Source of the DNA: Styela clava
Taxonomy: Eukaryota
Direction of reading: 5' to 3'
DNA: 64,000 nt
Assembly (NCBI RefSeq): GCF_964204865.1
Contig: NC_135264.1
Span: 11,780,001 to 11,844,000 of the forward strand
This document shows positions 11,653 through 50,967 of the stretch, in pieces. Position 1 is the stretch's first letter. Every line of letters begins with the position of its first letter. The notes beneath the pieces were generated by a model, which saw nothing but the letters and a program-made list of their open reading frames with translations, had not been told where the DNA came from and ran no database searches. The translations under genes were made by a program, and so were the position numbers.

Positions 11653-12697
11653 TGTCAGTCTATTTAATTGAAAAGTTCTTTGAATGATTGTTGAATATTT
11701 TATAATGTGCAATAAAATGTAGTTAAATGAAGTTGCAGTACAGTGTACGGTTTGAGAGGGTTGGTCAGGCAGATTTGCGTCGATTTTTGAAGACCCATTT
11801 TTTTTTAATTTCGTTCCTCTAATGATCATACTGTGGTGTTAATCAATTTCGTGCCAAATATAGGAAAATCTAATCCTTGGTTGATATTTGAAGGTTTGTT
11901 TTTCACAAAGTCTCTCTTTATTCACCTTTGTAATTATACCTAATACTTGTTACTATGTATTCTATTTACATTTAATATTAGAATTTGGCCTCGAACCTAA
12001 GAGTTTGCATATAACATTGTAAAAATTTTTTTCCGATATTCTTCGTGTTCCACTAAAATGTATTAATTTTTGTTTTTTCTTTGTGCAGACCTATTCTTGT
12101 GCTTCTAGGTTACCGGTATGTGATATAAATTTATATATTTTTTTGATTATCTGTACCAGTTGAATGTGCTTAAACGTATCTTTTTTTTTCTTCGGAACAT
12201 TTGATTCGGAGTAGGATCCATTTTTTCGTACCGCTTGGGAAACGTTTTAGCTGGCGCCAACTCAAAGCAATTCAAATAGACGCTGCTAATATTCAGATAT
12301 TACAGCAAGGCGGTAATTCCGTAATGCGGACAGTGTCATATACTTTATTTAATCGCATGATTTCATAAACGTGTCTATATATTTTGTTAGCTTATATTTA
12401 AAACATTCAAAACGCTGCCATCATGAAATGCAAAAAGATAATCTTGAAGCAAATGTATGATTGATTGCCGAAGAAGGCTGATTTTGAGATCGTTGCAGAA
12501 GACATCGCTGAAGTGCCTGAAGATCTACAAAATGGAGGTCTGTAATAGCCAATACATACTGAAACATTGTTATAATCAATATATTTTTATTGAGAAACTT
12601 TTTCCCTTCAACTGTAAGCAATGGTACTCCGATTGGTTAGTGCAGTAGTGAGAGATTGGGTATTCGTTACTGGTATTGACTGTAGACGTTGTTTCAT

Positions 12698-13311
12698 GGT
12701 CTTACTACTTACTGAATACAGCGCGACACACCGTAAAGAGTGCAAAACGGAGGGAAACAGTGGGAAGCTGAAAAAAATTTTGCAAAGAGTCCGGGGAACC
12801 TTGTTTTGAGTTGGAGTACCACGGCAGCAAATTAAAAACACAAACCAACGTATGTAGCCAGTAAACATTTTCCATATGGACATGGTTGGCTTTAGGGTTA
12901 GGTAAAAAGGGATCTCCAGAAGTATGTGCACCAAAATGGCGCACAACCTGAAAATAGTATGTGTGTGTAGCGGATTCAGGTTGTGCGACATATTGCTGCA
13001 CATACTTCTGGAGCACCAAAAAGGTAGATATAATTTTGCATGATGACCTATAATCTGGTACATAACCTTGTAAATATACCGGAAATAGCGCCATAAAACC
13101 ATGGCGAGAGGCGCCGTGGTTCTTTTGTGGCAGGAGGGGGTAATGACTGCGTCTCCTGTTTTGCGCAGTTTCCCTCTGGTTTGCGGTGTTTCCCTCTGTT
13201 TTGCGGTGTTTCCCTCTGTTTTGCGCTGGTTTCCTTCTGTTTAGCGCTGTTTCGTGCTATTTCGCGCTCTTTGCGGTGTTTCGCGCTGTATTCAGTAAGT
13301 AGTAAGACCCA
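12698..13311. mobile_element. Non-autonomous TIR element (Mutator-like or other 8-9 bp TSD family) with subterminal tandem repeats, in PTGR1 copy 1 intron 1
   Basis: TIR GGTCTTACTACTTACTGAATACAGCGCGA at both ends; flanking duplication TTGTTTCA(T) at 12689 and 13312; absent at the paralogous site in copy 5. Confidence 0.85.
12910..13017. mobile_element. Short GG-terminal palindromic MITE nested in the previous element
   Basis: GGATCTCCAGAAGTATGTGCA / TGCACATACTTCTGGAGCACC inverted ends; AAAAAG on both flanks; same family as 25015-25250. Confidence 0.7.
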
Positions 13312-47376: not shown

Positions 47377-50300
47377 ATGAAGTGCAAAAAGATAATCTTG
47401 AAGCAAATGTATAATGGGTTTCCAAAAAAGTCTGATTTTGAGATTGTTGATGAAGACGTTGCTGAAGATCTACAAAATGGAGGTTTGTAATAAATTGATT
47501 TTTATTGAAAACACTTTAGTGATGTTTACAAGTTCATCGGTAGGCAATTGCAATTATAGTCAGATTGATCAGCATAGAAATTGTGTCTTCGTGACTGATA
47601 TTGACTGTAAAAGTTGTTTAATATATTCCAAGCCAAGCCCCAATCTTCACTCACTTAGTCTGTATAAAAATAGTATGTATTAGTTTGTATTCGTGTTGTG
47701 GTGTCCAGCATTGTACATTTATGCAGTTTTGTTTGCTATCATTCACTTCTCGCCCACGACATACATACAATGATTTGTAAAGCAACATTTCTCTAAATTT
47801 GATGACATTATTCGTCTTGAAGACGTCGTATGTAATATGTATTGCTGATCGATTAATTAAAATCTGGTATCTGTTTGTTTCAGAATTTCTCTACGAGTCT
47901 CTCGGAATCAGCGTGGATCCGTATATAAGGTATTATTTGAGTAATCAGAATTTTATTTTAATAAACCAGCCTCCAAAGTTATAATACCTACGCCATTCTG
48001 GCATTCAAGGGGAATTATTGAATTATTGCATTTTTTTAATACGCTCTCAGTAAATAACGTTTCTTTGAAAATCTGAATTTTTTATAATGTTTAAAAATCC
48101 TCTCTGAAATATTATCATCATATCCTATTTTTCATTTTATTCCAGAGCATATGTCGGGGCTGTATACAAGCCCGGGGATACAGTAATTGGATCTGCACTT
48201 GTACGGTGAGGCAACAAATTTGTTTGAAATTTTAATACCGGTAACTTGTATTTGATCAAGTGGTATTTTCGTCTACATCTATCCTATAGTAAACATCGCA
48301 AATGGTGAGTCAATGCGCGCTGATGTACGCGTTGTGCGTTCATACTTTTGTACAACGTAAAATACCATTGACAATTTTATTTGACAATAAAAAATGACAA
48401 AATATCGCAATAACAAAGTTTCCGATAACAAGGGTTGCGTGGAGTTTTGCGTTTGCAGGCCTTGCAGAGTCTCAACGGTACTTTTAATTAAATTATTTCA
48501 AAGTCGAATTTTATGAATTTGGTAATGAATCGTCGAACTTTTCAACCGATGTTGAAATCAAGCATCAAAGTTTTAGTACTTGATATTCATCGAAATCGAA
48601 GTCCAATATTCCGAGCTCAAAGTCAGGGTCATTTTGTCAAATCATCTTTAATCACACAAACAAAACTGTATCCAACGTCATTGTGGGTTGACAGCTATGA
48701 CAAGTGGGAAGTTTATTTCAAACAACTTGTTTCCGCAAACAATCCCTCATAATTCATATCTCCGACCGAAAGCCTATTGATTTTGGATGAATTATGTCGT
48801 ATAATTAGCGAGTTATTGATTGATTAGTGATGGGACACGCGGTGTCGCGGAGTCAGAGCGAAGGGTACACGCCGCTAGATCGATAAGTCGGCGGTCTATG
48901 ATCGCTATCTCGGTTATAAATTCATTGATGTCTATTTTCAGTTCTTCAACGTGGAACTTCGTCAATATTTGTCATTGCGTGACACAAAAAATACTTTTTA
49001 GCTGGGATCCCGTTTTGCTTTGCAAACTCCAAATATAATTTTTACCTATCTGAGCTTATTGAACACACTGACCGAACTGGATTCAGAGCCTAGATATTTT
49101 TTGGACACGAAATGTACATATGGGTCATTTTGTTAATATGTTGTTTTTGTTCTTGTTCATTTCTTGTTTGTATTTTTCTTGTTTTAAAAAATCGCATTTC
49201 TCATTACCTACTGGACCAATTGCTTTCGAAATTGTGCACCTTCTGACGGTATTTTACTGGGGCAGATGGCTTACCCGTTCTACTTTGTTTTGGCCTAGGT
49301 GTCCATATATTTGAGCAACCCTCCATTGTTTTTCATGATATCGTGATCGTAGTCTCGGACATATTTCTGGCGACGGAACGTCCACAAAACTATGAATCTG
49401 AGTATTTTATGGCTATCCAAGTTTCCTGATGACTGATTCTTATTTTCTGTTTGCATTTTCTCATAATAGGGTGACAAAAAGCAAAAACGAAAAATTTCAA
49501 AAGGGAAAACTTCTTGTTCTACATTGTGGATGGAGAAACGGTGGTAAAGCCAAAGAGAGTGACGTGTTTTTTGTGCGAGATGACATGCCAGCATCAGTAC
49601 CAGAATCAGCGGGCCTTGGATTATATGGAATCGCTGGGTATGTTTAAAATGTTTTATAAACTAAAATGAAGCATTGACTATCATAAAATTATAACAAACG
49701 AAAAAATTCGGATCCAAAAATTATTTCCGTCGGTCATCAGCTCCAAGGCCCATTCGCGCTATCCCTAGATGAGTACATTTCCTAAGAAACCTACATGACG
49801 TTGACACACCACTGCTGTTGACGCTTTCGCTAACCCCATCACCTCATTTAATTGTTTATATATTTCACCCAACAACTTTTCCTGATATATTTGGCGTCAT
49901 TTTACATTATTAGCCTGACAGCCTGGATCGGATGGATACTCGTGTGTAAAATAAAAGAAGGGGAAACAATTTTTATCAGTGGCGCAGCCGGAGCAGTCGG
50001 AAATGTTGCAGCTCAGATTGGAAAAATTAAGGTAACTCCATGACTAGCGAAAAATTAATTTAGTGTCACAAGAACGCAGGTACGTCACTCAATCACATTT
50101 TATACAATTCAGGGATGCACAGTTGTTGGATCTTGCGGAACAGACGAAAAAGTAGAATTTTGTAAGAAAATTGGATATGACGCAGTGTTCAACTACAAAA
50201 AAGAGTCTGAAAGTTTGGATGCAGCTATCAAACGGGTTGCCCCGAAAGGAATAGATTGCTACTTTGACAACGTAGGTTTTACGGAGACTGTTTTACAGTA

Positions 50301-50967
50301 CTTCGATGTTCAATAGCTAGTCATTAAAAACAAGCAAGAATTGTTTGGCAATGCAGTGCAATATTTCAGAGAAACGTGATAAAATTTGCTTCTACAACTA
50401 TCCCTCCTCAATTCATGAATGTATTATATTTACTAAGTTAGCAAACAAACTTTTCAAACAATTTTTAGGTTGGAGGTTCTTTCTCAAGTACTATTTTACG
50501 TCACATGAATTCTGGTGGACGAGTGGGAGTATGTGGATCTATATCTGCTTACAACGAAACTACACCTGTATTAGGTGAGTAGACTGTTCGCTACAAAAAT
50601 ACATTCTTTCCATAAAATATCCTGGTTAAGATTTACAAAACGTATTGTTCAGCTCCCATTCTTCAACCTACCATCGTTAGAAATGAACTGATGTTGCAAG
50701 GATTCCATTTAAGATCTTATGTGAGTAAACATAAGGAAGCATATGAAGATCTGAAAAAATGGACGATTGAGGTAAGCTAGTCATCATATGTAGGCTACTT
50801 ACTTATTGTTCATGGGTATAAATATTTTTTCAAAATCTTTTTTATCTCTTTTCTAGGGAAAGATGAAAAATTACGAAAAAGTTACAAACGGCTTCGAAAA
50901 CGTTCCCGATGCATTTATTGATATGTTGCGAGGAGGAAACGTTGGCAAAGCGGTTGTCAGGCTGTAA
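47377..50967 (+). CDS. PTGR1: PTGR1 copy 5, 9 exons, intact
   Basis: All nine exons in phase with GT-AG junctions; no stops seen. Confidence 0.92.

What the first reader, a model, noticed from the sequence alone, without database searches (positions are those of the whole stretch)
12423..50967. Five-copy PTGR1 tandem array: candidate diversifying enone/enal detoxification cluster
Seen: five head-to-tail paralogues with shared introns and flanks (one dead, four in frame). Known: PTGR1 is a single gene in human, reduces 15-keto-prostaglandins and alpha,beta-unsaturated aldehydes and ketones, and is Nrf2-inducible. Inference: recent birth-and-death expansion combining pocket diversification with promoter differences, plausibly for dietary or environmental electrophiles such as algal oxylipins in a filter feeder. 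This is my best candidate for an undescribed system in the window.
Basis: partly seen in the sequence, partly recalled or inferred. Interest (0 to 1): 0.8.

Follow-up and report, generated by a model that had tools for sequence, protein, structure and literature searches.

The report
Sea-squirt PTGR1 enone-reductase gene array
The sea squirt Styela clava carries a real head-to-tail row of four intact genes and one dead copy of a common detoxifying enzyme (prostaglandin reductase 1), an ordinary lineage-specific duplication that public gene models already show.

Summary
Window 12423-50967 holds five head-to-tail, plus-strand copies of a nine-exon PTGR1 (LTB4 12-hydroxydehydrogenase, alkenal/one reductase) gene. 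Copies 2-5 are intact (330 codons, 32 of 32 introns GT..AG). Copy 1 is dead: two stops, a frameshift, exons 2-4 missing.

The genome is Styela clava. RefSeq already lists the four intact copies as "prostaglandin reductase 1-like" and copy 1 as a LOW QUALITY protein. Elsewhere the genome has one diverged paralogue, on another contig.

The copies differ by 5-37% in introns, so they are not haplotigs. They form a Styela-specific clade, and Ciona and amphioxus duplicated PTGR1 independently. Birth-and-death expansion is therefore supported.

Selection is purifying overall (dN/dS 0.14-0.31). Amino-acid changes concentrate in two substrate-pocket loops (exons 3 and 8), but pN/pS there is 0.46-0.86. 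The same loops are the most variable in other animals' PTGR1. Diversifying selection is not shown.

Copy 3 is expressed as a complete spliced mRNA. Expression of the other copies is unresolved. Upstream regions do differ, but the ARE-like motif is weak evidence. The algal-oxylipin idea is untested.

Verdict: a real but ordinary tandem family of a known enzyme. This scan had not reported it on other DNA.

The parts
12423..14757 (+). Copy 1, pseudogene. Exons E1 12423-12537, E5 13720-13837, E6 13923-14089, E7 14268-14373, E8 14453-14571, E9 14647-14757. E2-E4 are absent.
   Evidence: stop and 9-nt insertion in E1, 8-nt insertion in E6, stop at the end of E8. RefSeq models it as LOW QUALITY PROTEIN XP_077965579.1 (P0003).
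21221..24688 (+). Copy 2, intact 9-exon gene. Exons 21221-21326, 21767-21812, 22071-22130, 23251-23418, 23665-23782, 23865-24023, 24199-24304, 24384-24502, 24578-24688.
   Evidence: 9 of 9 exon peptides are found in order in RefSeq P0288.
32277..35468 (+). Copy 3, intact 9-exon gene. Exons 32277-32382, 32815-32860, 33120-33179, 33943-34110, 34431-34548, 34632-34790, 34983-35088, 35173-35291, 35358-35468. The transcript contig runs on to 36009.
   Evidence: = P0287. A spliced 1619-nt contig in run X5 has GT..AG joints at the predicted exon ends, and its exon-1 piece carries the copy-3 letters at 5 of 5 listed positions.
38120..43502 (+). Copy 4, intact 9-exon gene. Exons 38120-38225, 38402-38447, 38705-38764, 41995-42162, 42466-42583, 42663-42821, 43014-43119, 43198-43316, 43392-43502. 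Intron 3 is enlarged by reverse-transcriptase-like ORF fragments (38993-40078).
   Evidence: = P0286. Its E2/E3 region has depth 0 in X5 and X11 and about 1-9 in X10.
47377..50967 (+). Copy 5, intact 9-exon gene. Exons 47377-47482, 47884-47929, 48146-48205, 49470-49637, 49914-50031, 50113-50271, 50469-50574, 50653-50771, 50857-50967.
   Evidence: = P0289. The identical protein appears in two RefSeq annotation releases.
32177..32276 (+). Proximal promoter block, about 100 nt with a TATA-like run. It is conserved upstream of the ATG of all five copies; the copy-3 coordinates are given here.
   Evidence: Alignment of the five upstream regions. The X5 contig piece laid on copy 4's exon 1 starts 43 nt upstream of that ATG.
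31819..31828 (+). ARE/AP-1-like 10-mer, 458 nt upstream of the copy-3 ATG. Its homologue lies at 46895-46904, 482 nt upstream of copy 5.
   Evidence: The block is deleted in copy 4, and the copy-2 upstream sequence is not homologous beyond about -110. The degenerate motif occurs 18 times in the 64-kb window.
17525..19054 (+). LINE reverse-transcriptase ORF (509 aa) in the spacer between copies 1 and 2.
   Evidence: 69.6% identical over 1409 aligned nt to the LINE at 54706-56107 on the other strand.
27667..29823 (.). Internally repetitive spacer between copies 2 and 3.
   Evidence: Self-BLASTN: 27667-27825 matches 29265-29698, and there are internal repeats at 28142-28666 and 29126-29823.

Best explanation
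This is a lineage-specific tandem array of PTGR1-family genes in the ascidian Styela clava. The family comprises NADPH-dependent alkenal/one (enone) reductases, also called leukotriene B4 12-hydroxydehydrogenase, and belongs to the MDR superfamily.

An ancestral unit was duplicated head to tail, most simply by unequal crossing-over. The unit held a promoter, nine exons, a 3' flank and a spacer, about 5.8 kb as still seen between copies 3 and 4. Retroelement and repeat insertions later stretched the spacers and one intron.

Four copies stay under purifying selection and one has decayed. This is classical birth-and-death evolution.

By homology, the enzymes should use NADPH to reduce the C=C bond of alpha,beta-unsaturated aldehydes and ketones. 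The paralogues differ mainly in two substrate-pocket loops and in their upstream regions. That may give them somewhat different substrate ranges or expression, or it may simply reflect low constraint.

Shown here: array structure, intactness, family membership, purifying selection, lineage specificity, and transcription and splicing of copy 3. Inferred: catalytic activity, the duplication mechanism, and any functional difference between copies.
For: Structure. Family: the exon-6 ORF matches PDB PTGR1 chains. P0287 matches chain 1v3t_A at E 4.1e-86 over residues 2-328. Pfam ADH_N_2 plus ADH_zinc_N score above cut-off in 4 of 4 array proteins. The equivalents of Tyr245 and Cys239 are kept in 4 of 4 copies. 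Species and public models. Genome-wide, exon queries find only the five window copies, one diverged gene on contig C16, and one weak hit on C17. In the tree of 33 hand-picked proteins, the array plus the C16 paralogue form a clade (100/99) inside the tunicates, the array itself has 100/100 support, and Ciona's duplicates are separate. Pairwise dN/dS is 0.14-0.31. Outside the pocket loops, nonsynonymous changes are far below the neutral share (binomial p 4e-17). Intron divergence is 5-37%. Copy 3 has a spliced transcript.
Against: Enzyme activity was not tested. The residues that bind the prostaglandin carboxylate or indomethacin in mammalian PTGR1 are not kept: Arg56 becomes A/A/G/V, Tyr262 becomes T/T/K/R and Tyr273 becomes R, so the substrates may not be prostaglandins. 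Only copy 3 is clearly expressed in the runs laid. Copy 4's exons 2-3 had depth 0 in two of three RNA-like runs. The runs are Logan contigs labelled 'RNA?' (a guess), so levels and strand cannot be read. A Pfam ADH_N_2 search of the whole genome found nothing (0 matches). That is a miss, because the domain is split over exons. The DNA run that covers the stretch may be the assembly's own source, so it is not independent proof of copy number.
Confidence: 0.85

Rival explanations
1. Adaptive diversification. Positive selection reshaped the substrate pocket of each paralogue and rewired their promoters (ARE kept in some copies, lost in others). The array would then cover a wider range of dietary or environmental electrophiles.
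For: 22 of the 56 variable amino-acid positions fall in 45 of 325 codons: exon 3 plus the first 26 codons of exon 8. These codons hold the equivalents of the ligand contacts Ala53, Arg56, Tyr262, Val272 and Tyr273. The nonsynonymous-to-synonymous ratio there exceeds the rest (Fisher p 0.011 on two independent pairs). Upstream regions differ, and an ARE-like motif is present only in copies 3 and 5.
Against: pN/pS in the loops is 0.46-0.86, never above 1, and does not differ from neutrality (binomial p 0.18). I chose the window after seeing the data. The same loops are the most variable in 29 other PTGR1 proteins (entropy 2.07 against 1.34, p 7e-6), so low constraint explains the pattern. The ARE-like 10-mer occurs 18 times in 64 kb, and its sharing by copies 3 and 5 follows from their shared flank. 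There are no expression or kinetic data per copy.
Confidence: 0.2
2. Dosage amplification. The copies are functionally equivalent and are kept because more enzyme is useful. The differences between them are neutral.
For: The copies are highly similar (dN 0.033-0.068). The proximal promoter is shared by all copies. Catalytic and cofactor-binding parts are conserved. The variable loops evolve at a near-neutral rate.
Against: Only copy 3 was clearly seen as mRNA. Copies 2-5 have been kept intact for dS 0.16-0.26, which is also compatible with subfunctionalisation. Distal upstream regions differ.
Confidence: 0.35
3. Assembly artefact. The copies are haplotypes or mis-joined duplicates of one or two real genes.
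For: None directly. The best DNA run may be the sample the assembly came from, so it is not an independent check.
Against: Intron divergence between copies is 5-37%. Retroelement and repeat insertions differ between units. An older RefSeq annotation release carries distinct copy-3-like proteins, copy-4-like segments, the identical copy-5 protein (P0289) and a 197-aa partial model most like copy 2 by eye. RNA-like contigs from three other studies match copy 3 and, by mismatch counts, possibly copy 5.
Confidence: 0.03

Closest known systems
Mammalian PTGR1 / LTB4 12-hydroxydehydrogenase / 15-oxoprostaglandin 13-reductase (PDB 1v3t, 2dm6, 2y05)
   Same: Same length (330 against 329 aa) and full-length alignment (E 4.1e-86). 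Same Pfam architecture. Tyr245 and Cys239 equivalents conserved. The array falls inside the animal PTGR1 tree.
   Different: About 41-47% identity to vertebrate PTGR1 proteins. Arg56, which binds the prostaglandin alpha-chain carboxylate (PMC8377670, passage read), and the indomethacin contacts Tyr262 and Tyr273 (PMC6702150, passages read) are replaced. There are five tandem copies; a single human gene is recalled, not tested here.
Second Styela clava PTGR1-like gene on contig C16 (RefSeq cluster P0292)
   Same: Nine exon matches in the same order (exon 3 only weakly, E 0.065). Same Pfam domains. Sister to the array in the tree (100/99).
   Different: 51% identity to copy 3. It is a single gene on another contig.
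Independent PTGR1 duplicates in other animals (Ciona intestinalis, C. savignyi, amphioxus, beetles, crickets, a sea urchin)
   Same: These species have several distinct 'prostaglandin reductase 1(-like)' proteins each, some on the same contig or with neighbouring locus tags. The Ciona and amphioxus paralogues group by lineage.
   Different: I did not examine their genomic arrangement. The Styela array forms its own clade on a long stem branch (0.62 changes per column).
Plant and fungal alkenal/one double-bond reductases (for example PDB 6eow, 7e4d, 2j3h)
   Same: Same MDR subfamily and same fold class by sequence (E about 1e-61 to 1e-64). They reduce enone or enal C=C bonds with NADPH (from the depositors' names and recalled knowledge).
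   Different: More distant than animal PTGR1.

Membership tests
PTGR1 / LTB4 12-HD alkenal/one oxidoreductase (MDR superfamily) | Two-domain architecture: ADH_N_2 (PF16884) followed by ADH_zinc_N (PF00107) | tested here: met
   both score above the curated cut-off in P0286-P0289 (ADH_N_2 60.9-65.1 bits against 31; ADH_zinc_N 69.3-78 bits against 31.8).
PTGR1 / LTB4 12-HD alkenal/one oxidoreductase (MDR superfamily) | End-to-end sequence homology to solved PTGR1 structures | tested here: met
   P0287 against 1v3t_A, E 4.1e-86, residues 2-328 on chain 7-331. Against 2y05_A, E 3e-84.
PTGR1 / LTB4 12-HD alkenal/one oxidoreductase (MDR superfamily) | Active-site Tyr245 and neighbouring Cys239 (guinea-pig numbering) | tested here: met
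   Y and C in 4 of 4 intact copies. Y is present in 33 of 33 aligned proteins. The catalytic role of Tyr245 is recalled; PMC6702150 lists it only as a docking contact.
PTGR1 / LTB4 12-HD alkenal/one oxidoreductase (MDR superfamily) | Glycine-rich NADP(H)-binding motif at the start of the Rossmann domain | tested here: met
   Exon 5 reads ...[16 protein letters not shown]... in all five copies and aligns to the matching PTGR1 stretch. The motif's name and role are recalled.
PTGR1 / LTB4 12-HD alkenal/one oxidoreductase (MDR superfamily) | Placement inside the animal PTGR1 clade | tested here: met
   The tree holds 33 proteins picked by hand out of those fetched, and it contains PTGR1-type proteins only (no PTGR2 or other MDR outgroup).
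PTGR1 as a 15-keto-prostaglandin reductase specifically | Carboxylate-binding Arg56 and the contacts Tyr262 and Tyr273 | tested here: not met
   A/A/G/V, T/T/K/R and R/R/R/R in copies 2-5. These residues also vary in fish, reptile, amphibian and invertebrate PTGR1, so they define the mammalian pocket, not the family. The alignment around Arg56 contains a gap.
PTGR1 / LTB4 12-HD alkenal/one oxidoreductase (MDR superfamily) | NADPH-dependent reduction of alpha,beta-unsaturated carbonyls | not testable with these tools
   Needs enzyme assays.
Nrf2/ARE-controlled detoxification gene | Functional antioxidant response element in the promoter | tested here: inconclusive
   a RTGAYNNNGC match lies at -458 (copy 3) and -482 (copy 5). 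There is none within 1.5 kb upstream of copies 1 and 4, and one at -1190 of copy 2. Background is 18 matches in 64 kb.
Nrf2/ARE-controlled detoxification gene | Induction by electrophiles | not testable with these tools
   No suitable runs were examined, and the single read-laying run was used on untreated material of unknown state.
Birth-and-death tandem gene array | Same-strand copies with homologous exons, introns and flanks; at least one pseudogene; a lineage-specific clade | tested here: met

The most novel reading that the evidence does not exclude
The four intact paralogues have been pushed apart by selection on two pocket loops (exons 3 and 8), giving enzymes with different electrophile spectra. 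In addition, neighbouring copies may be combined by read-through splicing: an older RefSeq release has isoforms that join copy-3 exons to copy-4-like exons 8-9, and a copy-4-like exon 1 to copy-5 exons. The array would then work as a small combinatorial detoxification module in an invasive, filter-feeding ascidian.
Probability: 0.15. Interest if true: 0.5.

Novelty: new member of a known kind. Interest (0 to 1): 0.25.

Why it matters
If the copies do differ in substrate range or inducibility, the array would be a compact natural experiment. It would show how an enone-reducing detoxification enzyme diversifies in a marine invader exposed to many dietary and pollutant electrophiles. The pocket-loop variants, at the equivalents of residues 56, 262 and 271-273, would be ready-made leads for engineering ene-reductase specificity. 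As it stands, it is an ordinary lineage-specific tandem expansion of a well-known enzyme, already present in public gene models. Its main value is as a correctly annotated example: four genes plus one pseudogene.

Tried and rejected
Searches that gave nothing or were badly posed:

- The Pfam ADH_N_2 search of the whole genome gave 0 matches although the domain is present. It is split over exons 1-4, so exon peptides were used instead.
- Literature. 'Styela clava' plus 'prostaglandin reductase' found 1 unrelated review. 'prostaglandin reductase' plus 'ascidian' found 2 unrelated papers. 'prostaglandin reductase 1' plus 'tandem' plus 'paralogs' found 2 unrelated papers.
- Searches were badly posed. 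With min_terms too low they listed papers that lack the key term, and they gave nothing usable.
- I did not see the Styela clava genome paper.

Readings rejected:

- Haplotype misassembly, on divergence and differing insertions.
- 'Exon 8 shows diversifying selection'. Exon 8 has the most variable positions (16 of 39), but its pN/pS is 0.46.

Left undecided:

- Expression of copies 1, 2, 4 and 5. Mismatch counts of some X10 and X11 contig pieces equal the copy-3-to-copy-5 or copy-3-to-copy-1 difference counts. I could not compare them letter by letter. An allele of copy 3 with a copy-1-like exon 8, as in the older RefSeq protein P0290, would explain the X10 pieces equally well.

Not done: codon site models (no codeml available, and only four sequences), structure prediction, and dating.
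Full report
WHAT IS THERE

The window is AT-rich animal DNA (GC 0.30-0.42) without N. Self-BLASTN shows a unit repeated in direct orientation at about 12.2, 21.1, 32.1, 37.9 and 47.2 kb, at 70-93% identity.

An ORF of one unit matches solved PTGR1 / LTB4 12-hydroxydehydrogenase chains (1v3t_A, E 5.5e-18). A library-wide phmmer search with that exon gave 1,656 proteins at E up to 0.001 and supplied full-length PTGR1 proteins of other species. Laid on the window by tblastn, these hit the same five places, all on the + strand.

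Reading the splice sites in copy 2 and mapping them to the other copies gave a nine-exon coding model of 993 nt.

- Copies 2-5 have 36 of 36 exons of identical length, 32 of 32 introns GT..AG, and open frames.
- Copy 1 keeps 6 of 9 exons. It carries two stops, a 9-nt insertion and an 8-nt frameshifting insertion.

WHOSE GENOME, AND IS IT KNOWN?

A 142-aa hit that reads like copy 1 is XP_077965579.1, 'LOW QUALITY PROTEIN: prostaglandin reductase 1-like [Styela clava]'.

A 90% cluster holds seven 330-aa Styela clava 'prostaglandin reductase 1-like' proteins. Four of them (P0288, P0287, P0286, P0289) contain, in order, 9 of 9 exon peptides of copies 2, 3, 4 and 5 respectively. The array is therefore already modelled in RefSeq.

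I searched spliced models exon by exon and left out the joined step. All full-length analyses used these database proteins.

No paper in the held library deals with PTGR1 in ascidians. None describes PTGR1 tandem paralogues.

HOW MANY IN THE GENOME?

Exon 6 and exon 4 peptides were searched over the whole 377-Mb assembly. They find the five window copies (exon 4 only in the four intact ones) and one diverged gene on contig C16. That gene is 65% identical in exon 6 and 43% in exon 4. There is also one weak hit on C17.

The C16 locus shows nine exon matches in the same order, with exon 3 only weakly matched at E 0.065. It corresponds to RefSeq cluster P0292, which is 51% identical to copy 3.

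A Pfam ADH_N_2 search of the genome found nothing. This is a miss caused by exon splitting.

ORIGIN

I built a maximum-likelihood tree of 33 hand-picked PTGR1 proteins.

- Tunicates are monophyletic (100/98).
- The Styela array (100/100) is sister to the C16 paralogue (100/99), on a long stem.
- Inside the array, (copy 2, copy 3) and (copy 4, copy 5) pair with moderate support (89/79 and 96/49).
- Ciona intestinalis (three proteins), C. savignyi (two) and amphioxus have their own lineage-specific duplicates.
- The next-best database relatives of copy 3 after P0292 are at most 47% identical, so no orthologous array from another species is on record in that database.

The listings show several distinct PTGR1-like proteins per species in many insects, a sea urchin, frogs and fishes. 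Some lie on the same contig or have neighbouring locus tags. Multiplying PTGR1 is common.

REAL COPIES, NOT HAPLOTIGS

Short-intron divergence ranges from 5% (copies 1 and 2) to 29% uncorrected, or 37% after Jukes-Cantor correction.

The units carry different insertions:
- a LINE reverse-transcriptase ORF between copies 1 and 2;
- reverse-transcriptase-like fragments in intron 3 of copy 4;
- a repetitive block between copies 2 and 3.

The tightest spacing is ATG of copy 3 to ATG of copy 4, 5.8 kb. It probably approximates the ancestral unit.

The 3' flank of copy 1 is closer to copy 3 (7.6%) than to copy 2 (16.5%), although its introns are closest to copy 2. This mosaic suggests gene conversion or different breakpoints.

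SELECTION

Nei-Gojobori counts were made exon by exon and summed. They give dS 0.16-0.26, dN 0.033-0.068 and dN/dS 0.14-0.31 for the six pairs of intact copies. The copies have been kept by purifying selection.

Per exon, pN/pS is 0.08-0.20 except in exon 3 (0.60) and exon 8 (0.46).

56 of the 325 complete codons vary among copies 2-5. 22 of these lie in exon 3 plus the first 26 codons of exon 8, which together are 45 codons. In that window:
- pN/pS is 0.46-0.86;
- on two phylogenetically independent pairs it is 0.57, not different from neutrality (binomial p 0.18) but higher than the rest (0.17; Fisher p 0.011).

I chose the window after seeing the data, so that p-value is generous.

The alignment to guinea-pig PTGR1 reproduces the published numbering: Ala53, Arg56, Cys239, Tyr245, Tyr262, Val272 and Tyr273 all fall on the expected letters. 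It shows that these two stretches hold the ligand contacts.
- Arg56 binds the prostaglandin alpha-chain carboxylate (PMC8377670, passages read).
- Arg56, Tyr262 and Tyr273 are the essential contacts listed for indomethacin in 2DM6, and Ala53, Cys239, Tyr245 and Val272 appear as docking contacts (PMC6702150, passages read).

In copies 2-5 the equivalents are A/A/G/V (Arg56), T/T/K/R (Tyr262), H/L/R/H (Ile271), F/L/L/L (Val272) and R in all four (Tyr273). Tyr245 and Cys239 are kept.

The paralogues therefore do differ where the substrate sits. But the same columns are also the most variable in 29 other PTGR1 proteins (mean entropy 2.07 against 1.34, Mann-Whitney p 7e-6). Arg56, Tyr262 and Tyr273 are not conserved even in fishes, reptiles and amphibians. 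Low constraint explains the pattern, and positive selection is not demonstrated.

PROMOTERS

All five copies share about 100 nt upstream of the ATG, with a TATA-like run. Copies 3, 4 and 5 share further upstream sequence. Copy 2 is unrelated beyond about -110.

The block is deleted in copy 4.

The degenerate 10-mer occurs 18 times in the window (0.28 per kb). Its sharing by copies 3 and 5 follows from their shared flank. This is a lead, not evidence of Nrf2 control.

EXPRESSION

Of 15 runs found, I laid four on 32800-38780. All four are Logan contigs: X1 carries no kind on record ('?'; I took it for DNA from its 0.66 word share), and the other three are labelled 'RNA?'.

Run X5 holds one 1619-nt contig that covers copy 3's exons 4, 5, 6 and 7 and exon 9 plus about 540 nt of 3' end. 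It has 0-1 mismatches per exon piece (4 in the longer exon-9-plus-3'-end piece) and GT..AG joints at the predicted exon ends. Its exon-1 part, laid on copy 4's exon 1 because copy 3's lay outside the stretch, carries the copy-3 letter at 5 of 5 listed positions. Some of the same joints appear in X10 and X11, which belong to other studies.

Copy 3 is transcribed and spliced as modelled.

Copy 4's exons 2-3 had depth 0 in X5 and X11 and about 1-9 in X10, and no copy-4 joint was listed. Some X11 pieces have as many mismatches as copy 5 differs from copy 3. Some X10 pieces match the count for copy 1 or for a copy-3 allele. This is suggestive only. Contigs cannot give expression levels.

ODD DETAIL

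The older RefSeq release has isoforms that are chimeras of adjacent copies.
- P0270 is copy-3-like in exons 1-6 and copy-4-like in exons 8-9.
- P0291 is copy-4-like in exon 1 and identical to copy 5 in exons 3-9.

Both combinations follow the genomic order. Read-through splicing is therefore possible, as is a prediction or assembly artefact. I could not test this.

VERDICT

This is a real, lineage-specific, five-member tandem array (four genes, one pseudogene) of a known enzyme family. It is under purifying selection, with near-neutral pocket loops.

The evolutionary mode it proposed is supported. Its adaptive and ecological reading is possible but not supported by any test I could run.

Earlier notes of this scan on the same genome name Styela clava and report another tandem array of NADPH reductases. 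I did not check that report.

Noticed in passing
window 54617-58639 (- strand): An apparently intact LINE: a 330-aa ORF (57647-58639) followed by a 980-aa ORF with reverse-transcriptase-like sequence (54617-57559). It is 69.6% identical over 1409 aligned nt to the RT ORF at 17525-19054 inside the array.
   Followed up: no
window 33400-33600 and 36800-37000: Two short stretches, one in intron 3 of copy 3 and one in the copy 3-4 spacer, reach summed contig depths of about 0.9 and 1.7 million in run X1. Neighbouring stretches reach a few hundred to a few thousand. Many loose ends share a common motif, which points to a very abundant short interspersed repeat.
   Followed up: no
proteins P0270 and P0291 (older RefSeq release), relating to window copies 3-5: These isoform models are chimeras of adjacent array copies: copy-3 exons 1-6 with copy-4-like exons 8-9, and a copy-4-like exon 1 with copy-5 exons 3-9. 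The cause could be read-through splicing or an artefact.
   Followed up: partly
protein P0290 against window 35173-35291 (copy 3 exon 8) and 14453-14571 (copy 1 exon 8): The copy-3-like protein of the older release differs from this assembly's copy 3 at 4 of 39 exon-8 residues, but at only 3 residues elsewhere. Its exon 8 is closer to the pseudogene copy 1 (2 differences, by eye). This hints at gene conversion or high polymorphism in exon 8.
   Followed up: partly
window 4184-4738 (+): A single uninterrupted 184-aa ORF that looks, by eye, like an SR splicing factor: RNA-recognition-motif-like start, a CCHC zinc knuckle and an RS-rich tail. It may be an intronless gene or a retrocopy. I did not search it.
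   Followed up: no
window 5793-6695 (+) and 60796-61509 (+): Two further long ORFs flank the array: a 300-aa acidic, serine-rich ORF and a 237-aa ORF. Neither was searched.
   Followed up: no
window 12603-13491: In copy 1 the place of exons 2-4 is taken by about 0.9 kb of unrelated, more GC-rich sequence with repetitive ORF translations. This looks like a replacement rather than a clean deletion.
   Followed up: no
G000:C17:19345588-19345683 (-): A weak match (53% over 32 residues, E 2.7e-4) to exon 6 of the array. It is probably another MDR reductase and was not examined.
   Followed up: no
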